Source: Macrostomum lignano
Taxonomy: Eukaryota
DNA length: 64,000 nt
Direction: 5' to 3'
NCBI GenBank assembly: GCA_002269645.1
Contig: NIVC01003421.1
Span: 1 to 64,000 of the forward strand
The position numbers and the translations under genes are program-made. Position 1 is the stretch's first letter, and every line of letters begins with the position of its first letter. The notes under the pieces were generated by a model. The model did not search any database. It was not told the origin of the DNA and saw only the letters and a program-made list of their open reading frames with translations. This document shows, one piece after another, positions 288-56,300 of this stretch.

Positions 288-590
288 TAGTAATAATATT
301 AATAATAGTAATAATTAAGTACACCTGGACTAATGGGAAGATGGGCAACCGACAGCTCAGCCGCAGCTATTGCGCGGCGCATCTGAAGGCTGCGTACGGC
401 TCTTCAGTCCAAGGACTGGGAGGCCGCCACACACATCCTCAATTACCCCAGCTAATGCTGGCACCCATTTTACAGCTGGGTGAACTGAAGCAATCCAGAG
501 TCAAAGTGTCTTGCTTAAGGGCACAAATTGTTTCTTGTGGGTTCAGAATCGAACCCCCGACCTTTCAGTCGTGAGTCCGACGCTCCAAAC
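288..590 (-). mobile_element. tRNA-derived SINE, copy 1
   Basis: The reverse complement gives a tRNA-like head (GAGCGTCGGACTCACGACTGAAAGGTCGGGGGTTCGATTC, B-box like), a central CAGCTGTAAAATGGGTGCC, and a 3' end CCAGGTGTA plus a (TTA)-like tail. Clearly homologous to the copies at 25845 and 45083. Confidence 0.85.
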
Positions 591-16523: not shown

Positions 16524-43140
<26,617 letters not shown>

Positions 43141-43295
43141 TGATTCTAAATCTGATTATATCTCAATCTCACTAGCGCTGTGTGAGTCGTAGATTATGAA
43201 GACAAAATCGATTTGGTTATTATTTGAATTAAACTAGTCACAGATTGGTGACTTTAGCTTAGAGACGATCGATTTAGTGTACGTCGCTTCTAGAG

Positions 43296-43850
43296 TGTAC
43301 ATTGCAATTGCGATGCCATTGGGAATGTACATTGCTGGCGTGAGAGGCAGTCGATAAGGAATGTACATTGGGAATGCACATTGCTGGCCTTAGAGGCGAT
43401 CGAAAAGCAATGTACAGTGGGGATGTACATTGCTGGCGAGAGAGGCAGTCGATCAGGAATGTACACTGGGAATGCACATTGCTGGCCTTAGAGGCGATCG
43501 ATACGCAATGTACAGTGGGGATGTACATTGCTGGCGTGAGAGGCAGTCGATAAGGAATGTACACTGGGAATGCACATTGCTGGCCTTAGAGGCGATCGAA
43601 AAGCAATGTACAGTGGGGATGTACATTGCTGGCGTGAGAGGCAGTCGATAAGGAATGTACATTGGGAATGCACATTGCTGGCCTTAGAGGCGATCGATAC
43701 GCAATGTACAGTGGGGATGTACATTGCTGGCGTGAGAGGCAGTCGATAAGGAATGTACATTGGGAATGCACATTGCTGGCCTTAGAGGCGATCGATACGC
43801 AATGTACAGTGGGGATGTACATTGCTGGCGTGAGAGGCAGTCGATAAGGA
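43296..43850. repeat. 98-bp tandem repeat (two related ~49-bp halves) just after the PHIP stop codon
   Basis: ATGTACAT anchors at 43423, 43521, 43619, 43717 and 43815. Confidence 0.93.
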
Positions 43851-45082
43851 ATAAGACACAATTTAGACTGTACCGTTAATATTATTTGCTAATACACGAA
43901 CTAAGATGTGCCTACAGTTGCTGCTGTGCTTATGTTTGCTGTGTGATCTATAAATTTGTTGCCGACAAAATGTGCACGGTTATTATTTGTATTGTTAATT
44001 ACAAGTGTAATGCAGTTATGAATACTAGCAGGAATTTGTAAAGAAACCAATAACTATTTTCATTAACTTGCAAGGTTTTATTTTCATAGCATATGTAATT
44101 TATGCTTTCTTGATAGTGTAAATGCTTTTCTTACTACTTATTAACAGTAGTATGCTGTGTCCGAATTCGGCTCTCTCTAGTATAAATAGTTGGCTTTTAT
44201 TTATTTCATTTTCCTATTGTTAGTGTAAGCGTTGGCAATTACCTTTTTTGTCTTTTCTGACTTTCCTTCTGTCATATTTGTACAGTGCCATATATTAACT
44301 AATTACGATTGTATGGCCATTGTTTCATCTTGTTTTAATCATTTTCTCTGTGCCAACTTGCTCTTTCCGGACTATGAATAATAACAATTAGCAATATTTT
44401 AGCATCCCCAAATCACCCGTCTTTGGGTGTTATTTTTGTTTTAATAGTTTGAAAATGTGAACTGAAAATTAAAATTATATTTATATTCTGTTGGACTTGT
44501 ATATACGTGTATTCTAATAAATTATCCTCAGTAATATTATTAATAATGCTTATCTGTCTCTGCAACGCCTTGATTTATTATCGATTTTATTGTAGTATAC
44601 AAGACTAGATTTTTGTAGACCATAGCTTCGTATGTGGTCTACACATACGAAGTTCAGTAGTAAGTTGAGCAGGAGCATTTTAATGTATTTTAAAGCCAAG
44701 GCTCATTTATTGGCTCTTACCCCTCCCCAGCTTAAACCATCCGACCACCTTTCCACACTACCCCCCGCCCCGCCCCAATTTTTATTGCCTTTCTCGGAAT
44801 TCCAGCCTAAAGCTGCCATGTACATTTCAGTGGACTGACTAATGTACATTATTGCTGAACCAATTAGCAAGTTGTTTACGCCTGCAAGCTTGGGCTTCTA
44901 GGCTTATCAAAGTCATTTCAGCTGCCTTGTTTTTATGAAATAGTTTATGTATTCTTCTTTGCTACTGAACTGAAAGTAGAAAGCTGTTTTACTAAGTATA
45001 TATGCCTGAGTGGCCCATCTAGGTATTTTAGTATGTGTGGTATGTACTAATGCTAATCAGTAGGGAGTAGGGGGCCCACTAG

Positions 45083-45350
45083 AGGGTTTTTAGCCTAGTG
45101 GTTAGAGCGTCGGACTTACGACTTGAAGGTCGGGAGTTCGATTCCTGATCCCACTGGAACAATTTGTGTCATTGAGCAAGACAAGAAGACACTTAACTCT
45201 GTATTGCTTCAGTGTTCGCCCAGCTGTAAAATGGGTGCCAGCATTAGCTGGGGTAATTGAGGCTGTGTGGCGACCCCCCAGTCCTTGGACTGAACAGCCG
45301 TGGCTGAGCTGTCGGTTGCACATCTGCTCATTAGCGCAGGTGTAATCAAT
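45083..45350 (+). mobile_element. tRNA-derived SINE, copy 3
   Basis: TAGCCTAGTGGTTAGAGCGTCGGACT...GTTCGATTCC head, CAGCTGTAAAATGGGTGCC core, AGGTGTA plus ATT-rich tail. Confidence 0.88.
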
Positions 45351-45555
45351 TATTATAACGATTCATTTTAGCTTTGTAGTTTGTATTTTCGCGTTCACTT
45401 TAGATTAACTCAAGCTTATCTCTAAAGAGTAATAATTATACTAATTGCTGTATTGGTATAATTAAAGTAATAAAAACAATTTATTTACAATAAATTACCT
45501 GTGATAAGAACACGCGCAATCTAATTATCTGTGCTTTTCTGTCAGCCGTCGTCTC

Positions 45556-47679
45556 ATGGCCGCTCTTCGTCTGGAATCGAACAAAACCGCGACACATTGC
45601 TCACCGTCTTCAGTACCTGCTGAGTCTGCTCTGTCCAGCTTTGTTAATCTTGAGCGCATTGTCCTGGATCTAGAGAGCCAATCCATATCCAGAATCGAAT
45701 TGCCAGCTAAATCAGACGGCATTGAAAAATGCAATCAGTCCGGCACTTTAACTAAACTCCTCCATTTAAAACCAGTTGTTAAATTGACTCGATTGAAAAT
45801 CTTACCTGCAGCCAATCGCTGTTCAAGCCAAATCGACCAGCCTAGGCAATGGATTATATCAGCCTCCATATTGCCTTACACGCCTCAGGTTGGCGATCTG
45901 GCTGTTTACTTAGCTGACGCCCACACCGGCTGGTTTAATAATTATCGACAGAAGCATAAACTCGTTGCTCCTACTTATAGTAGTAAACTTTTTGAAGAAA
46001 CACCCGACGCTGTTAGACCCGAGCGAGCTGTGGTCCGAGTGCGCGGCATTCGCTACGTCCAATGTCGGAAACCCGACCAGCCAGCCGACTGGTTGATGCG
46101 GCTGCGCCTGAGAATTATCGGTGAAAATTGTGCTCAATCTAAATCAACAGTGCCAGAATTTATTGATGTCACCTGGCCTTTGATTGGTAGTAATTCTACA
46201 GAGTCTAGCAGCCTTGCTACGCCACAGTTTCTTGTGCCTCATTCTGTCTATAATGCTGCTATGCAAATGCAGTGGCACGTTGGTGACAAGTGTCGTTACC
46301 GCTGTTGTCATGGCAACAATAGTAAAGCGGAGTCTGACCGACTTGGCACAGTGCTGGGGTTTGACAAACAAAATCTAGTCAGCGGCTGGCGTTGCGTCAG
46401 AGTTCAGTGGGATGATGAAGTCGGCGAGGATCGTGTCAGCCCGTGGGAGATGCTGCCGGTTAGTGAAATTTGTGTTTGAGTCTGTTTATCCGCGCTTGTA
46501 GTCTGTTTATCCACTCCTTGAGGCTTCGGTCTGTTTATCCGCTCCTTGAGGCTTGAGTCGGTTTATCCGCTCTCTAAGTCTGACTATCCACTCTTCGAGT
46601 CTGTTTATACGCTCTTTGAGTCTGTTTATCCTCTCTTCGAGTCTGTTTATCCGCTCTTTGAGTCTGTTTATCCTCTCTTTGAGTCTGTTTATCCGCTCTT
46701 TGAGTCTGTTTATCCGCTCTTTGAGTCTGTTTATCCTCTCTTTGAGTCTGTTTATCCTCTCTTTGAGTCTGTTTATTCTCTCTTTGAGTCTGTTTATCCG
46801 CTCTTTGAGTCTGTTTATCCTCTCTTTGAGTCTGTTTATCCGCTCTTTGAGTCTGTTTATCCGCTCTTTGAGTCTGTTTATCCGCTCTTTGAGTCTGTTT
46901 ATCCGCTCTTTGAGTCTGTTTTTCCTCTCTTTGAGTCTGTTTATCCGCTCTTTGAGTCTGTTTATCCGCTCTTTGAGTCTGTTTATCCTCTCTTTGAGTC
47001 TGTTTATCCGGTCTTTGAGTCTGTTTATCCCGTCTTTGAGTCTGTCTCTATTCCATAAATCTCTGAGAAGTTGCCTGTTTTAACTCTGAATACCATGACC
47101 TATATTTAAAGTTCAGTTGCCTTAATTATCTCGCATAAATTTCAACCAACCCCAAAACAGTTGGACCAAGACAACGCGACAAAGACTGCCGTTTTGTCGA
47201 CAACCGAATCTGCCTCATCTCGGCGCTCAGAGTCGCTACTGCTGGACCGCATGCTCTCCTGTCTTCAAGAATGTCGCCGACCCTGCTGGCGTCGCCTGTT
47301 CGGCCTCGCTTTCTTAGCCGATCGTCGACCTCGCCGTTGTCAGAAGAGTTGGAAATCGAATTTTCCACTAAGCGTTTCCATGGTGACGAAGCGGCTTCGA
47401 CTTGGACAGTATCGGCATTCGCTGGCCGTTTTGCACGACTTAGCCGCTCTGTGCACCAACTATCGGAAGCGTTGGAGACTCGCCTATCGTACTGGCAGCG
47501 TCCGGAACACGGCCGAGGCGGCGATCGACGTTAAACGAGCCAGTCTGCTCTGCGACTCTGTAGCCGTTTGTTGCAGCCGGCTGGGCCAAGGAATTCAGGA
47601 GGATGAGAATTTGCGACAGATGCTGCTTGTGCCTGGCAGGGAAGGCCTGCTGCCCTTAGTTACCGGCGTGTTCCGCTGA
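45556..47679 (+). CDS. Divergent partial PHIP paralog: Tudor-like module + degenerate bromodomain, about 473 aa
   Basis: Exons 45556-46458 and 47161-47679 (GT-AG, phase 0). Motifs PYTPQVGDLAVY, QWHVGD, RVQWDD...VSPWEM and FPLSVSMVTKRLRLGQYR...HDL...VKRASLLCD align by eye to PHIP exons 14-16. There may be an upstream exon (acceptor at 45545). Confidence 0.8.
46476..47047. repeat. 21-bp minisatellite (TTTGAGTCTGTTTATCCGCTC) filling the paralog's only intron
   Basis: About 27 copies. Confidence 0.96.
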
Positions 47680-47869
47680 AACTGATTAGTTAATGTTGTG
47701 CATGAACCTTCATCAAACCATATTTATTGATAAGATTCTTAATCTACCTCTTTAGCGAAGATTTTCTAACGGTTGAGTTTGGGGTGAAGGTGGCTGTCCT
47801 TGCCCCAATCAATAATATTGTTAAGGTCGGGTGTCTGGAATAAAATCAATATATTTTTATCAAAACCCA

Positions 47870-48285
47870 GTTGGGGTGGGTGTCTTGGCTAAATCGATCG
47901 ATATTGAAGTGGGATGGGTGTCTTGGCTAAATCGATCGATATTGAAGTGGGATGGGTGTCTTGGCTAAATCGATCGATATTGAAGTGGGATGGGTGTCTT
48001 GGCTAAATCGATCGATATTGAAGTGGGATGGGTGTCTTGGCTAAACCGATCGATATTGAAGTGGGATGGGTGTCTTGGCTAAACCGATCGATATTGAAGT
48101 GGGATGGGTGTCTTGGCTAAACCGATCGATATTGAAGTAGGATGGGTGTCTTGGCTAAACCGATCGATATTGAAGTGGGATGGGTGTCTTGGCTAAACCG
48201 ATCGATATTGAAGTGGGATGGGTGTCTTGGCTAAATCGATCGATATTGAAGTAGGGGTGGGTGTCTTGTTATAATCGACCGATAT
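47870..48285. repeat. 38-bp minisatellite (GGGTGTCTTGGCTAAATCGATCGATATTGAAGTGGGAT), intergenic copy
   Basis: About 11 homogeneous copies. Confidence 0.95.
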
Positions 48286-48889
48286 ATAGTTATATGTATT
48301 TATCTGCAAGTCATGTTTTGTATTTATAAATATAGGTGATCTGGGGTGTCTGTGTTTTAAATCGTGTTTTACACTTCTTTGTTGTGTTTTCTTTTTTACT
48401 CGTAAGCTAAGAATCTTACTCTCTTCTTTCACGTTTTAAAGGTAATCAGTTGGCTAATATAGAATAAAGCCTTCTTCTTTCATGACAATGCCACTGTGAA
48501 TGTCGATGTATTGAATATTTGTTCATCTATAGTTAATAATCACGTGCTTTACCAATCATAAAATTGCAATCTACTTCTGTGCAAATGCAAATTTAGCCAT
48601 TGGCTAAATCTACCCTGTAATTACATTTTATCTGTTATCTAGAGTTCCTTTGTTATCTACCGATGCTTTTATGCATTCCTTTTAAAATATTTCCACACTA
48701 ATATGCAGTATATCAAGTTAATAATTTCATACGTGTCTTATTGTCATATGCGCTTAAATTAAGCAGTAACCTATTTAAAAGCATAGTTAATTAAAATATA
48801 TGTTTGGAGCCATGTGCCATATTAATTATTGCAGTGAATGTTGATTTCATAAAAATATTCCTGTCCTTATTATTCACTTTATACCCATA

Positions 48890-49596
48890 GCGCACCCACC
48901 CCACTCCCCAGTTTGATCGACTGGCCACGCTTTGCAGTTCAGACCCATCGCGCGCACCCACCCCACTTCCCGCTGGGTTTGGCTGGCCACGCTTTGCAGT
49001 TCAGACCCATCGCGCACCCACCCCACTCCTCGCTGGGTTTGGCTGGCTACGCTTTGCAGTTCAGACCCATCGCGCGCACCCACCCCACTTCCCGCTGGGT
49101 TTGGCTGGCCACGCTTTGCAGTTCAGACCCATCGCGCACCCACCCCATTCCTCGCTGGGTTTGGCTGGCTACGCTTTGCAGTTCAGACCCATCGCGCGCA
49201 CCCACCCCACTTCCCGCTGGGTTTGGCTGGCTACGCTTTGCAGTTCAGACCCATCGCGCACCCACCCCACTCCCCGCTGGGTTTGGCTGGCTACGCTTTG
49301 CAGTTCAGACCCATCGCGCACCCACCCCACTTCCCGCTGGGTTTGGCTGGCTACGCTTTGCAGTTCAGACCCATCGCGCACCCACCCCACTCCTCGCTGG
49401 GTTTGGCTGGCTACGCTTTGCAGTTCAGACCCATCGCGCGCACCCACCCCACTCCTCGCTGGGTTTGGCTGGCTACGCTTTGCAGTTCAGACCCATCGCG
49501 CACCCACCCCACTCCTCGCTGGGTTTGGCTGGCTACGCTTTGCAGTTCAGACCCATCGCGCGCACCCACCCCACTCCCCGCTGGGTTTGGCTGGCA
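48890..49596. repeat. 61/63-bp minisatellite (CGCACCCACCCCACTCCTCGCTGGGTTTGGCTGGCTACGCTTTGCAGTTCAGACCCATCG...)
   Basis: About 11 copies between the convergent gene ends. Confidence 0.95.
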
Positions 49597-50318
49597 ACTG
49601 TGTATTTCGGACCCTTCAGATAGAGGAGTACTCGTACATGTAGAAGTAAAAAAGTTAGACAGCTAGCTCTTGAATGCAAGCAGTTTTGATACGCCAAATC
49701 AAGTACGTATAGACGTTCAAAGCGTTTTTATATTATATATTATTTAATCAAAATATGAAGCTTCTACAGATTCAAGGTCGGAAGTTGAGTCGCCTTGCGA
49801 AATATTATTTTTCTTTCGATGAGACAAATCAACTGCCTCAAATACCTATATTATAGTTTGTACGAGTGTGTACCAGATCTGGCATGCGTTGCAAATGAAA
49901 GTATCCATTGAATATTGGCACTGAATATACATGGGGAATAATTGATTGAAAAAATGACGAGATTACCTTACATCGATAGCTACAACACGCTGTACATGAA
50001 AGTGATTTTAGAAAGAGAAATTTAACACTAATTCCAATTACTTAATTTTCATTTCGTATAAACGAGTGGGCTTCTTATCACTATCAGGTACCGGTATAGG
50101 AAACAAATCACAAGCCATCGAAGGTTAACTAAAAAGTGTGAGCTTCAGTTAGGTGTACAAATAACAAAATCAAAGCGATTTACTAAGATAATAAATCAAT
50201 CAATCAATTTTTAACAATTATTCGATCGAAGCACTATTTCAGTGAGACCTTAGCCACTTGTTTTTTGTACTCAAACAGAAAAAGTCCTACGAACGCACTA
50301 CTAGCAGTAGCTTGCCGG

Positions 50319-53300
50319 CTAAACAGAGGGCTGACTGCGATCGTTAGTGACGGCCTTCTTTAAGCCGTCCTTGCGGAATCCGGCGATATCCGACAGCAGC
50401 GCGCCGCGGCCCTGGCCACCGCCAGCCGCTCCAGGGTCACCGCTGGGTGGCATCGGCGGTGGTGGCGGCGGTGGGACACCAGGAGGCGGAGGAGGAGGCG
50501 GCTGCTGTTGCTGCTGTTGCGCGCTCGCTGTGTTAATGAAATGTACGATTTGTCTTGGTCAAACCGATCGATATTGGAGTGGGATGGGTGTCTTGTCCAA
50601 TCGATTGATATTGGGGTGGAATGGGTGCCCTGGTCAAATCGATCGATTTTGGAGTGGGAGAGGGTGTCTTAGTTTAATCGATCGATATTGGAGTGGGGTG
50701 GGTGTCTTGGTCAAACCGATCGATATCGGAGTGGGAGTGGGTGTCTTAGTCTAATCGATCAATATTGGAGTGGGATGGGTGTCTTGGTCCAATCGACCGA
50801 TTCTTGAGTGGAATGGGTGCCCTGGTCAAATCGATCGATTTTGGAGTGGGAGAGGGTGTCTTAGTTTAATCGATCGATATTGGAGTGGGGTGGGTGTCTT
50901 GGTCAAACCGATCGATATTGGAGTGGGAGTGGGTGTCTTAGTCTAATCGATCAATATTGGAGTGGGATGGGTGTCTTGGTCCAATCGACCGATTTTTGAG
51001 TGGAATGGGTGCCCTGGTCAAATCGAGTTTAGTTTAATCGATCGATATTGGAGTGGGGTGAGTGTCTTGGTCAAATCGATCGATATTGGAGTTGGGATGG
51101 GTGTCTAGGTCAAACCGATCGATATTGAAGTACTCGGCTTTTCACTTACGGTTGACTTTAGTAGCATCACCGTCTGCGGACTGCAACAAGACGGAAGAAT
51201 AAAGAGAACCGTTTTAATTCATAGAAAGAAAACTTCTATTGGAAGCTGCAGGAGCTGGTCAAACCAAAGCTTTTAAAACAGAACTCACAGAAAATTTCGC
51301 TGTCCTTCTTGCCCGCCTTTCATCCTCAGTAAGGTTGGCCGCTCTCGAACGCCGTTTCACCAGGCTCACTTGGCGCTGGTCCTCTCGCAGTCGGAACTCT
51401 TGAGCAGCCTTATAGGCGGTGAGCACCTCTTTAGCTCTGCCAGCAATCTTCCACTGTGGCTTGGCCAGATAGTGAACCGGCGTGGATGCGAAGAAGCTTG
51501 AGTTGGGATTTGAGCACTTTATTTATGAGTCATTGCGTTCCGTATAAAAAAATAATCCCCAATTCCTCTTTGGTTAAAAGACCAAGTTTCCAACTAAGCA
51601 TTCTGGCCACAGAACTTCATTTCCTTACTCAAAGAAGCCTCTATGGTCGCTGCGCTCCCCAGGAAGGGACACTATAGTTTGGGTAGCATACAAGTTTAGG
51701 GGTAAAAACCCAATTGGAAAGCAGTAAATGAATAGGAAAATGCAACGTTTTTCATTTTTTGATTGATAACTTTTTAACTCAAAGTCATAGAAAGATGCAG
51801 CTTGCACTATTCAACGCAAAACATTCAGAACTTTAGGTCTCCAAGGTAAGGTTGTATTATTCAAAAAACTCCCGTTTTTAGTGCGAGAAAAAATACTTTA
51901 CGACCCATCAGGCCATGCAAACATATGAAATAAAAATTGAATTGGTTACCCTTAGGTGATAATCAAGCAAAAGAGAGTGAAATTAACTTACATACAGAGC
52001 AGACAATTGCTGGTGCAAGCTGTATAAAAATAGCACTTTGTATGACTCCATAAAACAAAAGCAAAATCTACTAAGAGTATACATCAGAGCTATAGCTCAT
52101 TTCTCAGATAGTTTTGACTATCTATCTGCCTCATCCTAGCATGGCACTCTCTCGCCGAGTCTGAGCAGATGTCATTGTGGTAGGTCGCTTCTCAGGAACA
52201 GTTTCGATGAAGTAGGATGGCGCGTTTGGAAAGATGCTGGGTACGGCATCAGAAGTGAACCAAGCGTCGATTTTTCAGCTTCTTTGCTTGTCCATCTGCA
52301 TATGCAAAAGCCGGAGCGCTTACGGCTGGAGTTGGAGTCCTAAGAGTTTGTTACAAAGAACATTTCCGAAAAATGCAGCGAGCAGATCCGGTAGTTGTGC
52401 TTTGGATCGCAGCGCAACTTCTCCCAACTCTGCTGCTGTCCACTTTCGGGGAATTGCAGAGATCCATTTTCCCAGAAGCTCCGGCTGTGTATATATTCTT
52501 TTTCCAGTTAGCAAGCTATGAAATACGAGAGGTGTTACAAAAGTTCGCGTACCAACTGCTCTAGCGAGAAATCGATAAGCAGCAGCATCATTTCATATTT
52601 TATGCCATTCCCCTAAACTTGTATAGCGGAGTGGCGTGGGGCGGATGAGTGTCATGGAGGAAAGAATAGAATGGAGTGCTAATCTGAGCCAGTTATTTTT
52701 ATCTCGCTCGATCTTCGCTTTTAACATCCCTTTCCCCCCGTTCTTTCCTATTGGCTCGTGACTACCATAGACAAAATCTTTTTCGTCTCGATTTCGTTTT
52801 CGCCCCCTCGGAAAGTAACACCATCTGAAAGTAGTATCGTGGACTATATGTGAATATAATGCCAGTGGATACAGCATGCGAAGCTTTGAGCAAAAATTCA
52901 ATCTGCTTGATTCTGAACATTCGGTCAATTCATTTTAAGATTCACTTGAATCTAAAAACGTTATATTACTAAAATACATGATGCGTTATATTTTGCAGTG
53001 TATATACAAGAGTCGTCGTGTGACCGTACTATGTTATGACCGTACATACATAGAAATTCAAAGGCAGCACTAAATTCTTTTGAAAAATAAACATTAAACT
53101 AATGGCTTTCAGTTTATGTAGTAACTACCAGAAATTTTTAACTTTAACTTAAAACTTAAACTTAAAGAAACTTAACGTACAATAAACTTTTATCAATTTT
53201 TGTGAAATTAAATGCCTGATGATTCTGGCAGCGAAGGGCATGTCATTTTAGTTAAGCTACACAAAAAACTAAAACTCTGAAAAAAACATATTTTGACGTG

Positions 53301-56300
53301 AGCTCGCACTTTGGTGTGACATATTTTTCAGAGGGGGCGAAAACGAAATCGAGACGGAAAAGACTTTGTCTATGGAAGTCACGAGCCAATAGGAAAGAAC
53401 GGGGGGGGAAAGGGATGTTAAAAGCGAAGATCAATCGAGATAAAAATAACTTGCTCAGATTAGCACTCCATTCTATTCTTTCCTCCATGGTGAGTGTCCC
53501 TTCCTGGGGAGCGCAGCGACCATAGAGGCTTCCCTGCCTTACTATTGCCTGCAAGGCAAGCAAGTTGATATTTTGGCCATAGACATCGGCACAATGAAGG
53601 ATGCCAGCAGCAACCACTGCCATAGACTCTCAATTTTCAAAACTATTGTTGAATTTTTGAGCTTATTGAAATAATGCCATAAAAATGGAGTTCCATTTTC
53701 CCTCGTTATGCGCCGGGCCAAATCGATTGCTTCTGAATCGGAATAATTTTATAAAAATACCCCACCCAGCCAAAGGATTAGGCCAGGATCGGCTAACTCC
53801 GGCCCGCGAAGCCTCTCTATCTGGCCTTCGGGTCTCAATGTTTGTGTCTCTTCTCCCCTCTCATCTCTCGACTCACCTCTCTCCCCTCTTCTCTCTCCAC
53901 TCTTCCCTCTCTCTTCTCTCTTCCCTCTCCCCTCTTCTACCCCCTTCCTCTCTCCCATCTCCTTTCTTCCCTTTCCCTCCTTTCTCTCATGTCTCTTCTC
54001 CCATTTCATCTCTCGCCTCTCCTCTCTTACTCTTTTCTCTCTTATCTTCTCTCATCTTTCCACTCTCGTGTGGCCCGCAGCCAAGAGCAGGATTCTTAAT
54101 CTGAGTCTTGAGGTAAAAAGTCTGCCAACCCCTGGATTAGGCAGTGACCTTCACTATCTTTAACTTACGGATTTTCCAACAGTTCTGGAACTGTAGGCAT
54201 CCCAGATCTAATGGCATCTTCGGTTAAAATCGATTGAATAATATTCTCTGGAATTGGATAAATAATTGAAAAGAAAACAAATTAAAATGATAAAAACAAC
54301 AACCTTAAAACTCAACAACTCACTCAGATCAGTGGAGCAGGTCAGCGAGTGCGTGTCCACATAGGACGAAGTTAACACCTGACCAGTGGCCATTTCGTAC
54401 AGGCAGTGGCCGAACGAATAAACGTCAATTTCTTCAAAAGATTTCAGACGTTTCAACGACAGAACTCGTTGACGAAGCGAGCAGCTCAGGCCTAGCAGAC
54501 CGTTCTCAAGGTCTGTCAGCTTGCAGCCGTTCTCAGATACAAGCACGTTTCCAAGGTGGAGATGTCCTGGGTAAAGCAGTTTGAGCATTGGATTTTACAT
54601 GACTTGTTTAAGCATTGGACACGTGACTCCCTACTGACCTTGAGGACACGTGAGGACTCTGAGGACAGGTGACCCCCTACTGACCCTAAGGACACGTGAC
54701 TCCTATTGACTCTGAGGAAACGTGACCCCCTAACTACTCAGAAGACACATGATTTTAAAAGTACACTAACAAAGGACACGTGACCCCCTACTGACCCTGA
54801 GGACTCGTGACTCCCTACTGACCCTGAAGACACGTGACTCCCTACTGACCCTGAAGACACGTGACTCCCTACTGACTCTGAAGACACGTGACTCTCTACT
54901 GACCCTGAGGACACGTGACTCCCTACTGACCCTGAGGACACGTGACTCCCTACTGACTCTGAGGACACGTGACTCCCTACTGACTCTGAGGACACGTGAC
55001 TCCCTGACTCTGAGGACACGTGACTCCCTAACTACTCAGAAGACACATGACCTTAAAAGTACACTACCTAAGAACACGTGACGTAGCCCATAATCGATAA
55101 CTCACCGTAGGCGAAGCCCTTTGAGTGCATAAACTTGAGTGCTTCAAGAATCTGCCGACCAAACGACTGGATCTGCGGCACACTGAGACCGCCGCTAGAA
55201 GACGAAGCTCCTTTTTGTCGGCCGTACTTCTTTAGACAGTCCAACTTTGGCTTTGCCTATAAAAATTAAACCAGTATGTACATTAGAACTTTAAAGTGTA
55301 AACGTGAAGTGTAACAGGTTAACAATCTTTTTAAGGCCCACCTTGTGCAGTAGGTCTCGAACTGAGCCGTGCCTTTCAAATTGTCTGACGCAATAAAATC
55401 CGTGCTTAACGGCTCCGCAAATGTTGGCATTGGCAATGAATGGGTGCTAGAATTTCAGCATTAGAACAAGAAACAATAATAATGAACAAACTACTTTACT
55501 GTAAGTAGAAAGTAAAGAAAAAATAGATAAAATTACGCTAATCGACGTTAGACAGGACACAACGGCAGCCGTGTCTTTCTGGTCCAAATTGCAAAACGGT
55601 CCGTAGCCAACCTATATAAAAACGAAAAAAAATCTTTAAATGAAATTCAACTACTAACAGTAGTTCTAAATAGAAAATATATTGAATAAACACTCACCCA
55701 AGTCATCAGGTACTCATTCCTGTCCGTGGGCAGAGCGCTCTCCGCAGTGAAATAAGTTTTACGAATTCTTGTTCCTGTAAATTGTAAATCATGACTCACT
55801 GAAATTCAATGCCACTTTATAAGCTTCAAGTTTTAATAACTTACCCATAAACGAACAGGGTTGCAACACCTGAAAAGTGCTTTCGGATCTGAGAACCATC
55901 GACACGTGTTGCAGTGACAGCTCTGTGAGGATGCAAGAGTGGAAAGAAATTATTGTTGATAAAGGAATAACAGCATGAGCATCTGAGAGGATGATGGTGA
56001 CCTAGCAACTAAAGATCTGGGAGGCTGGCCCTGCAACTGAGGATCTGGGAGGCTGGCCCAACAACTGAGGATCTGGGAGGCTGGCCCAGCAACTGAGGAT
56101 CTGGGAGGCTGGCCCAGCAACTGAGGATCTGGGAGGCTGGCCCAGCAACTGAGGATCTGGGAGGCTGGCCCAGCAACTGAGGATCTGGGAGGCTGGCCCA
56201 ACAACTGAGGATCTGGGAGGCTGGCCCAGCAACTGAGGATCTGGGAGGCTGGCCCAGCAAATGAGGATCTGGGAGGCTGGCCCAACAACTGAGGATCTGG

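What the first reader, a model, noticed from the sequence alone, without database searches (positions are those of the whole stretch)
45556..47679. Tandem PHIP offshoot: Tudor-like reader plus predicted acetyl-blind bromodomain, without the WD40 region
Seen: 2.4 kb after PHIP, on the same strand, an intact ~473-aa frame keeps only the PQ(V/I)GD-Tudor-BD1 block. BD1 NNAEYFN aligns with TNYRKRW, so the acetyl-lysine Asn becomes Trp. The Tudor WWSG aligns with DRLG, losing aromatics. I see no nucleotide similarity to PHIP, yet there are no stops or frameshifts, and the PHIP intron after YIDSVQ is absent. Established: PHIP/BRWD WD40s link to CUL4-DDB1, the cryptic Tudor reads H3K4 methylation, and bromodomains need the conserved Asn. 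Inference: an old, selected, neofunctionalised chromatin factor or antagonist of PHIP, possibly undescribed.
Basis: partly seen in the sequence, partly recalled or inferred. Interest (0 to 1): 0.8.

Follow-up and report, generated by a model that had tools for sequence, protein, structure and literature searches.

The report
Truncated, diverged PHIP paralogue in Macrostomum
Just downstream of the flatworm PHIP chromatin-reader gene lies a real two-exon gene, already annotated as hypothetical, that is an old and highly diverged copy of PHIP's double-Tudor plus first-bromodomain block and has apparently lost the histone-mark pockets, so it is a moderately interesting lineage-specific variant of unknown function.

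Summary
The window is Macrostomum lignano contig NIVC01003421.1. The feature is the annotated gene BOX15_Mlig025752g2 (hypothetical protein). It has two exons (45556-46458 and 47161-47679), split by a 702-nt intron that holds a minisatellite, and encodes 473 aa.

Homology to the neighbouring PHIP is real and colinear from the PQ(V/I)GD motif through the double Tudor into helix B of BD1 (BLASTP 1e-14; hhalign 97.6%, residues 91-404). There is no WD40 region and no BD2.

The Tudor-like domain passes Pfam ARF_AD. The PHIP "WW" tryptophan, probably the one needed for H3K4me binding, is gone.

The bromodomain claim is only half supported. Sequence similarity covers helix A and half of helix B only. 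Pfam Bromodomain is below threshold, and a single-sequence model does not retrieve bromodomains.

"Asn becomes Trp" is not established. The ungapped register gives W406, but BLASTP and MAFFT insert 11 residues and keep an Asn (N417). Neither register is significant.

The domain has turned strongly basic (pI 11 against 5).

The GenBank model comes from a transcript-based annotation. A second copy gives dN/dS 0.32 from only ten changes. No orthologues were found, but the databases appear to lack congeners.

Verdict: a real PHIP-derived gene, probably no longer a histone-mark reader. Function is untested.

The parts
45535..45545 (+). Pyrimidine-rich tract ending in CAG, next to the annotated 5' end. 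It could be a splice or SL trans-splice acceptor.
   Evidence: Sequence cttttctgtcag. The GenBank CDS is 5'-partial and starts at 45544 (SRRL before M1). In-frame stops lie at 45499-45504. The M. lignano trans-splice motif is [T/C]TNCAG (PMC8629364), and this site matches it only in part. Use of the site is not tested.
45556..46458 (+). Exon 1, codons 1-301. Residues 1-94 have no detectable relatives. Residues 95-301 are the double Tudor-like (cTudor, DD-like plus AD-like) module.
   Evidence: hhalign covers residues 91-404. The AF2 model built with a PHIP alignment gives beta strands over 115-302 at pLDDT 70-87.
45883..45897 (+). PQVGD motif (residues 110-114), counterpart of PHIP PQIGD at 36551-36565
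   Evidence: P, Q, G and D are nearly invariant in the family.
46222..46458 (+). Ancillary, Tudor-like domain (residues 223-301; it continues into the first codon of exon 2)
   Evidence: Pfam ARF_AD E 2.1e-9, 37.6 bits (cut-off 27). BRWD_AD 30.2 bits (cut-off 40). PDB ARF DNA-binding domains match at E 8.8e-5. Foldseek gives 8oj1_A at E 6.9e-5.
46336..46347 (+). DRLG (residues 261-264) in place of PHIP WWSG. The family-invariant Trp is lost.
   Evidence: The second W is invariant in 28 PHIP/BRWD sequences. In human PHIP, W1081A abolishes H3K4me binding (PMC5710144). That W1081 is this same position is inferred from spacing only.
46459..47160 (+). Only intron (phase 0, GTTAGT...AG). It holds a 21-bp minisatellite at 46553-47045.
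   Evidence: The intron is 765 nt in the second genomic copy, which is 63 nt or three repeat units longer. It lies 7 codons upstream of the PHIP intron after ...NVGEDG and in a different phase.
47161..47679 (+). Exon 2, codons 302-473 plus the stop codon. It encodes a basic helical domain derived from BD1.
   Evidence: Predicted helices are 319-339, 373-381, 388-412 and 416-443. The single-sequence model gives the same helix limits. The pI is 11.0 against 5.1 for PHIP BD1.
47359..47469 (+). The only stretch with detectable bromodomain sequence similarity (residues 368-404, helix A and the first half of helix B)
   Evidence: Pfam Bromodomain E 0.21, 12 bits, profile positions 34-69 of 84. A BD1-only HMM scores 6.6 bits, reached by 1 of 2000 shuffles.
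47473..47475 (+). W406, which falls at the acetyl-lysine Asn position in the ungapped register
   Evidence: Both AF2 runs place it inside helix B.
47506..47508 (+). N417, aligned with the invariant acetyl-lysine Asn by BLASTP and MAFFT after an 11-residue insertion
   Evidence: In both models it lies in the loop between helices B and C.
47839..47844 (+). AATAAA, the likely poly(A) signal, 160 nt after the stop codon
   Evidence: motif only.
36497..40070 (+). Reference paralogue: the PHIP exons encoding PQIGD, cTudor and BD1. Exon ends are at 36613 and 39033, and exon starts at 38594 and 39641.
   Evidence: This block matches 308 PDB sequences, nearly all bromodomains, at E<1e-3. The offshoot matches none.

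Best explanation
Shown:
- This is a real, spliced protein-coding gene of Macrostomum lignano (BOX15_Mlig025752g2).
- It arose as a partial copy of the adjacent PHIP/BRWD gene.
- It keeps only the double Tudor-like module and the helical domain that was BD1.
- It lacks the WD40 propellers, which in PHIP link to CRL4-DDB1, and it lacks BD2.
- It has diverged to about 22-25% identity, yet fold-core residues remain: P173, L180, F225, W240, G264, W285, S295, W297, P370, R379, Y385, R386, D394 and N401.

Inferred:
- The duplication is old.
- The protein keeps the scaffold but no longer reads H3K4 methylation or acetyl-lysine. The WW tryptophan is replaced by D/R behind a longer, ARF-like loop. The ZA-loop PVD and Tyr positions are replaced. 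Helix B carries either a Trp or an 11-residue insertion at the Asn position.
- Charge has flipped from acidic to strongly basic. The most likely mode of action is therefore binding of a new, probably acidic ligand (nucleic acid or an acidic protein surface), without ubiquitin-ligase recruitment.
- It is unlikely to compete with PHIP for histone marks.
For: Gene model and identity:
- The window equals NIVC01003421.1.
- The spliced 473-aa product equals PAA51489.1 apart from four extra N-terminal residues.
- The GenBank annotation of this assembly derives from RNA-seq and transcriptome data (PMC5730564).

Homology:
- BLASTP 1e-14 and hhalign 97.6%.
- Distant PHIP/BRWD fragments cover residues 108-401 and 223-403 in a full HMMER scan.
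- ARF_AD scores above its Pfam cut-off, and Foldseek's top hits are ARF DNA-binding domains.

Losses:
- No WD40 or BD2 sequence nearby.
- WW becomes DR.
- Bromodomain similarity is limited to residues 368-404.
- There are no PDB bromodomain hits, against 308 PDB matches, nearly all bromodomains, for PHIP BD1.

Constraint:
- The ORF is intact over 473 codons despite about 75% residue divergence.
- dN/dS is 0.32. Exon 2 shows 0 differences in 519 nt, against 1.1% in the intron and 3.1% downstream.

Age and charge:
- Age signal.
- Charge shift and 17 Cys.
Against: - No orthologue was found outside M. lignano, so long-term selection cannot be measured.
- The dN/dS estimate rests on 10 substitutions (P = 0.07). 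Identical exon 2 sequences could reflect gene conversion.
- AF2 confidence is modest (mean pLDDT 57 and 59). The model made with a PHIP alignment is biased towards the PHIP fold.
- The single-sequence model retrieves only generic helical bundles.
- N417 may be the retained acetyl-lysine Asn. W278, W285 and W297 remain in the Tudor-like barrel, so residual reader activity is not excluded.
- No binding data exist for any ligand.
- Expression level and cell type are unknown. The gene id was not found in the paper texts and held supplements that were searched.
Confidence: 0.55

Rival explanations
1. An expressed but functionless relic. On this view it is a partial PHIP duplicate drifting towards pseudogenisation, and its open frame and transcript persist by chance or through gene conversion between genomic copies.
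For: - Both ligand pockets look degraded.
- No orthologues were found.
- dN/dS is not significantly below 1 (P = 0.07).
- Structure confidence is low.
- The donor GTTAGT departs from the species consensus GT[G/A]AG.
Against: - A 473-codon frame with no stop after divergence to 22-25% identity is very unlikely under neutral drift. With random codons the chance is about (61/64)^473, or 1e-10.
- Family-invariant core residues are kept while the pocket residues changed.
- Coding sequence diverges three times more slowly than flanks and intron (P = 5e-4).
- At least four protein variants, from two separately produced annotations, are all intact.
Confidence: 0.15
2. A histone-mark reader that still works. 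On this view a WD40-less cTudor-bromodomain module binds H3K4me and/or acetyl-lysine with atypical pocket residues. It would then compete with PHIP on chromatin, which is the reader's 'antagonist' idea.
For: - Gapped alignments keep an Asn (N417), and its flanks (N-x-A-E-x-x-I-x-V-K/R-R-A-x-L-L) resemble the PHIP BC loop and helix C.
- Aromatic residues W278, W285 and W297 persist.
- Human PHIP BD2 binds H4K12ac with Thr in place of the Asn (PMC8653789), so atypical pockets can work.
Against: - The family-invariant Trp of WW is lost. In human PHIP, W1081A, probably the same position, abolishes binding.
- The ZA-loop PVD and Tyr positions are replaced and modelled at pLDDT below 50.
- No significant bromodomain similarity exists beyond residue 404.
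- A net charge near +18 on the helical domain would repel basic histone tails.
Confidence: 0.15
3. Not a separate gene. On this view these are alternative 3' exons or a downstream cistron of the PHIP transcription unit, and the 'offshoot' is produced only as part of PHIP pre-mRNA.
For: - It lies on the same strand, 2.4 kb downstream.
- A CAG acceptor-like site sits 10 nt before the ATG.
- M. lignano has many operons resolved by SL trans-splicing (PMC8629364).
Against: - The PHIP frame ends in a stop at 43140, followed by ATTAAA at 43228.
- The offshoot has its own ATG preceded by in-frame stops and is annotated as a separate gene in both genomic copies.
- It repeats domains already present in PHIP, so it cannot be an alternative tail.
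- The 2.4-kb spacer exceeds the 1-kb repeat-adjusted operon threshold of PMC8629364. About 0.8 kb of it is repeats, so co-transcription is not excluded.
- Co-transcription would not change what the protein is.
Confidence: 0.1

Closest known systems
PHIP/BRWD (DCAF14, BRWD1, BRWD3) chromatin-binding module: cryptic double Tudor plus BD1
   Same: Same order of elements (PQxGD motif, DD-like barrel, AD-like barrel, helical domain) and shared core residues. Homology is significant. It lies next to the PHIP gene.
   Different: - No WD40 propellers and no BD2.
- BRWD_AD scores below the Pfam cut-off, and Bromodomain scores far below.
- The WW tryptophan and the ZA-loop motifs are lost.
- It is basic rather than acidic and rich in Cys.
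- It has one intron, at a different position.
Plant ARF DNA-binding-domain scaffold (DD-AD), reported to derive from a partial PHIP cTudor (PMC11685440)
   Same: - Another case of a PHIP cTudor used without the WD40 region.
- The offshoot's best Pfam, PDB and Foldseek matches are ARF ancillary domains.
- Like ARFs, it has a loop 5 residues longer than in PHIP, with basic residues where PHIP has WW. The paper says such a basic loop blocks the ARF cage.
   Different: It has no B3 insertion and no PB1 domain, and it is an animal gene. The resemblance to the ARF loop is most likely convergent. Whether the cage is blocked here has not been examined.
Atypical or degenerate bromodomains, such as PHIP BD2 and TRIM28 with Thr at the Asn position (PMC8653789)
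   Same: It departs from the canonical acetyl-lysine Asn context.
   Different: Those domains are still recognised as bromodomains by sequence and structure. Here only helix A and half of helix B are recognisable, and the fold is unconfirmed.
Short WD40-less PHIP isoform of mammals (the originally cloned IRS-1 PH-domain-interacting protein). This is recalled from memory and was not checked here.
   Same: A PHIP product without the WD40 region.
   Different: That is an isoform of the same gene, identical in sequence to full-length PHIP, with both bromodomains. This is a separate, highly diverged gene.

Membership tests
PHIP/BRWD (DCAF) family | N-terminal WD40 propeller(s) that bind DDB1-CUL4 | tested here: not met
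   There is no WD40 hit in the 473-aa protein. No WD40-like coding sequence lies in 43141-50300 (best tblastn E 0.074).
PHIP/BRWD (DCAF) family | Cryptic double Tudor (Pfam BRWD_AD, PF25313) preceded by the PQxGD motif | tested here: inconclusive
   BRWD_AD scores 30.2 bits, below the cut-off of 40. However, hhalign to a PHIP/BRWD profile gives 97.6% over residues 91-404, and the collection's precomputed Pfam lists PF25313.
PHIP/BRWD (DCAF) family | Two bromodomains after the Tudor module | tested here: not met
   Only one helical domain follows, and it is only partly bromodomain-like. The protein ends at residue 473, and no BD2-like sequence lies downstream.
Bromodomain (PF00439) | Score at or above the Pfam gathering threshold | tested here: not met
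   It scores 12 bits against 21.7, at E 0.21, matching residues 368-403 only. No PDB bromodomain matches at E<=10.
Bromodomain (PF00439) | Left-handed four-helix bundle (Z, A, B, C) with a ZA loop | tested here: inconclusive
   Four helices are predicted in the right order. With the PHIP alignment, the first bromodomain hit is at rank 50 (6hax_E, TM 0.62). The single-sequence model finds no bromodomain.
Bromodomain (PF00439) | Acetyl-lysine pocket residues: Asn at the end of helix B and the ZA-loop Tyr | tested here: inconclusive
   The Asn position is W406 in the ungapped register, or N417 after an 11-residue insertion. The ZA-loop Tyr aligns with K363 and PVD with AFL, in a poorly aligned, low-confidence stretch.
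ARF ancillary / Tudor-like domain (PF06507) | Score at or above the Pfam gathering threshold, plus the fold | tested here: met
   It scores 37.6 bits against 27. PDB ARF chains match at E 8.8e-5. Foldseek gives ARF DNA-binding domains at E 6.9e-5.
Auxin response factor (plant transcription factor) | B3 DNA-binding domain inserted in the DD, plus a PB1 domain | tested here: not met
   There is no B3 or PB1 hit. The region equivalent to the B3 insertion is short, as in PHIP.
Royal-family methyl-lysine reader | Complete aromatic cage, including the Trp needed for H3K4me binding in PHIP | tested here: not met
   The invariant second Trp of WW is replaced (DRLG). The functional role of that Trp comes from PMC5710144. 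Binding itself cannot be tested here.

The most novel reading that the evidence does not exclude
An animal counterpart of the proposed origin of plant ARFs. A partial PHIP copy (cTudor plus an ex-bromodomain) was freed from CRL4 and from histone-mark reading. It was then rebuilt into a strongly basic module that binds nucleic acid or some other new ligand, with its own regulatory role, possibly modulating PHIP-dependent chromatin in Macrostomum.
Probability: 0.15. Interest if true: 0.6.

Novelty: new variant of a known kind. Interest (0 to 1): 0.35.

Why it matters
PHIP/BRWD proteins couple histone-mark reading to a CRL4 ubiquitin ligase, and are known as single large proteins. It would parallel the proposed co-option of the PHIP cTudor in plant ARFs.

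M. lignano has transgenesis and RNAi, so the function could be tested directly.

The practical importance is limited. The gene is so far seen in one species, it is already annotated as hypothetical, and nothing yet shows a phenotype or a ligand.

Tried and rejected
- **Orthologue search.** A word-indexed search of 5.8 billion proteins and a full HMMER scan of 1.84 billion representatives found only the M. lignano cluster. This says little about age. The neighbouring PHIP block itself finds nothing above 46% identity, so close relatives of M. lignano seem to be missing from the collections.
- **P0006.** This hit (E 2.5e-26, 16 stretches) is a protein with an artefactual 16-fold internal repeat. 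Its score is multiplied by repetition, so it is not a relative.
- **Independent fold test.** A single-sequence AF2 model of exon 2 had low confidence, and Foldseek found only generic helical bundles.
- **Settling the Asn register.** An HMM global alignment left everything after residue 404 unaligned. BLOSUM scoring showed that neither register is significant.
- **Shared intron.** The offshoot intron lies 7 codons upstream of the PHIP intron and in another phase. It gives no evidence for or against DNA-level duplication.
- **Expression data.** The id Mlig025752 was absent from the searchable full texts and from the held supplements of two M. lignano papers. A third paper had no supplements held.
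- **PHIP cTudor structure.** No solved structure was found by sequence in the PDB, so human residue numbers could not be mapped directly.
- **DUF1618.** The UniRef name 'DUF1618 domain-containing' was not reproduced by Pfam at E<=10.
Full report
**What the window is**

The window matches Macrostomum lignano contig NIVC01003421.1 (assembly GCA_002269645.1, Mlig_3_7). Locus L002 from that record is identical to window 35544-57679. The sequence is eukaryotic and full of minisatellites.

**The observation**

PHIP occupies the + strand.
- WD40-coding ORFs start around 26763.
- The PQIGD exon ends at 36613.
- The Tudor exon is 38594-39033.
- The BD1 exon starts at 39641.
- BD2 lies near 40900-41100.
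- The frame ends at 43140.

The offshoot ATG is at 45556, 2,416 nt further on. The region 45556-47679 is not one ORF. The frame stops at 46477 unless a 702-nt intron is removed (GTTAGT at 46459, AG at 47159-47160). That intron holds a 21-bp minisatellite.

The same junction (EMLP|LDQD) is present in GenBank proteins PAA51489.1 (this locus) and PAA53517.1 (a second locus). It is also present in three UniRef models from another annotation.

**Homology to PHIP**

- tblastn of the 473-aa product against the window finds three colinear PHIP matches. They are the PQIGD region, the Tudor region (E 4e-7) and BD1 (E 0.023).
- BLASTP against my hand-spliced PHIP block gives E 1e-14 at 22% identity, from residue 95 to 444.
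- hhalign against a 28-sequence PHIP/BRWD profile that excludes the offshoot gives 97.6% probability and E 4.6e-12, over residues 91-404 only.
- A full HMMER scan of 1.84 billion representatives returns 12 hits. Apart from the self hit, these are ARFs, PHIP/BRWD fragments covering 108-401 or 223-403, and one repeat artefact, P0006.
- There is no nucleotide similarity to PHIP.
- No WD40-like or BD2-like coding sequence lies between 43141 and 50300.

**The Tudor-like part**

- Pfam ARF_AD matches residues 225-302 at 37.6 bits (cut-off 27). BRWD_AD gives 30.2 bits (cut-off 40).
- PDB sequence hits are ARF DNA-binding domains.
- An AF2 model made with the PHIP alignment is moderately confident over residues 107-310 (pLDDT 70-87). 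Its best Foldseek hits are ARF DNA-binding domains (E 6.9e-5), followed by Tudor, KOW and SAWADEE folds.
- This fits the published finding that the ARF DD-AD and the PHIP cryptic Tudor are homologous double Tudor-like folds (PMC11685440).
- PHIP's WWSG is DRLG here, and MAFFT places five extra residues before it. The second Trp is invariant in the 28 PHIP/BRWD sequences.
- In human PHIP, W1081A abolishes H3K4me binding (PMC5710144). The spacing to the BD1 Asn suggests it is the same position: 158 residues in human (N1239) against 162 here. This mapping is an inference.
- The longer loop with basic residues resembles the ARF loop that is said to block the cage.

**The bromodomain part**

Exon 2 encodes exactly the domain that follows the Tudor module. 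Detectable bromodomain similarity is confined to residues 368-404, which cover helix A and the first half of helix B.
- Pfam gives 12 bits, E 0.21.
- A BD1-only HMM gives 6.6 bits, reached by 1 of 2000 shuffles.

As a control, the M. lignano PHIP block matches 308 PDB sequences, nearly all of them bromodomains, at E<1e-3. The offshoot matches none.

Both AF2 runs predict four helices in the expected order, with helix B running to residue 412 and helix C starting at 416-419. The model made with the PHIP alignment is biased, and its first bromodomain hit is only at rank 50 (TM 0.62). The unbiased single-sequence model has low confidence and retrieves only generic helical bundles. Descent from BD1 is therefore well supported by position and partial sequence, but retention of the bromodomain fold is not confirmed.

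**The Asn question**

BLASTP and MAFFT instead insert 11 residues and align N417, with matching flanks, to the invariant Asn. HMMER and hhalign end at residue 404. Neither register scores significantly.

In both models W406 lies inside helix B and N417 lies in the B-C loop, so either way the pocket geometry differs from a canonical bromodomain. The ZA-loop PVD and Tyr positions align with AFL and K363, in a low-confidence stretch. Human PHIP BD2 shows that a missing Asn alone is not decisive (PMC8653789).

**Other properties**

- The helical domain has pI 11.0 (26 K+R against 8 D+E). PHIP BD1 has pI 5.1.
- The Tudor module has pI 8.6, against 5.5 in PHIP.
- The offshoot has 17 Cys. The two PHIP blocks compared, cTudor and BD1, have 1 between them.
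- Residues 1-94 have no relatives and are predicted to be disordered.

**Is it a living gene?**

The GenBank annotation of Mlig_3_7 was built from RNA-seq and a de novo transcriptome (PMC5730564). This implies transcript support, although I could not inspect the reads.

A second genomic copy (L001, NIVC01003075.1) has the same arrangement: PHIP, then the offshoot, then a PX-kinase gene on the opposite strand. Comparing the two copies:
- Exon 1 has 10 differences, 5 synonymous and 5 not.
- Exon 2 has none in 519 nt.
- The intron differs by 1.1% and the flanks by 1.5% and 3.1%.
- dN/dS is 0.32 (P = 0.07).
- Coding sequence diverges less than non-coding sequence (P = 5e-4).

An intact 473-codon frame at about 22-25% identity to its parent is itself strong evidence against neutral decay.

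**Age**

At 106 alignment columns where M. lignano PHIP departs from a strong family consensus, the offshoot shares the PHIP-specific residue 12 times (5.9 expected, P = 0.012). It keeps the ancestral residue 19 times (5.7 expected, P < 1e-4). This suggests an origin on the M. lignano lineage, but long ago. No orthologue was found, but the collections also lack any close relative of the M. lignano PHIP block, so this absence is not informative.

**Boundaries**

- In-frame stops lie at 45499-45504.
- The annotated CDS starts at 45544, beside a pyrimidine-rich CAG.
- If the 35-nt spliced leader, which ends in ATG (PMC8629364), were joined there, its ATG would be out of frame with the main ORF (my reading).
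- PHIP has ATTAAA at 43228, and the offshoot has AATAAA at 47839.

**Conclusion**

This is a real, PHIP-derived, WD40-less gene with a conserved scaffold and remodelled pockets. It is most likely no longer a histone-mark reader and cannot recruit CRL4. Its new ligand is unknown, and its basic charge points to nucleic acid or an acidic partner. It is a new variant of a known family, annotated but uncharacterised, and of moderate interest.

Noticed in passing
window 45084-45355 (+), 25837-26102 (+), 309-588 (-): There are three copies of a SINE-like repeat of about 270 nt, at 69-75% identity. The copy at 25837-25906 scores as a tRNA in Rfam (37.4 bits), although ARAGORN calls no tRNA. One copy sits only about 200 nt upstream of the offshoot ATG.
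   Followed up: partly
window 32543-36058: A 3.5-kb (TTAG)n array of about 880 copies lies inside a PHIP intron. Every PHIP intron examined here, and the offshoot intron, carries a minisatellite. TRF reports 71 rows for the window.
   Followed up: no
window 46553-47045 versus L001 intron: The 21-bp intronic minisatellite differs by 63 nt, or three units, between the two genomic copies. Exon 2 next to it is identical in both.
   Followed up: partly
window 40335-40587, inside ORF 39828-41477: A (CTGT)n microsatellite is read through in frame as CLSVCLSV... between BD1 and BD2 of PHIP. It is presumably intronic, and the exon boundaries there were not worked out.
   Followed up: no
window about 40990-41010 (PHIP BD2...FSNSRAYNT...): M. 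lignano PHIP BD2 reads AYNT, and three other family members with a BD2 read YNT. They appear to carry an Asn where human PHIP BD2 is reported to have Thr1396. The alignment to the human sequence was not made.
   Followed up: no
P0003-P0005 (UniRef A0A1I8HT91, A0A1I8INX6, A0A1I8IT30): UniRef names the 389-aa models of this gene 'DUF1618 domain-containing protein'. Pfam gives no DUF1618 hit at E<=10. P0004 differs at about ten residues from the other two UniRef models, which suggests at least three or four genomic copies or alleles.
   Followed up: partly
P0006: This 1990-aa protein (SAP and SPRY-like, hnRNP-U-like) contains roughly 16-18 identical copies of a segment of about 68 residues. It looks like an assembly or gene-model artefact, and it produced a spurious E of 2.5e-26 against the offshoot C-terminus.
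   Followed up: partly
window about 50319-57679 (-): The downstream neighbour on the opposite strand is a gene with PX, protein-kinase and WH2 domains. It is present in the same position in the second genomic copy.
   Followed up: no
A search with the M. lignano PHIP central block did not return the M. lignano PHIP protein itself, and returned nothing above 46% identity. The offshoot search, by contrast, did return its own cluster. The reason is not known.
   Followed up: no
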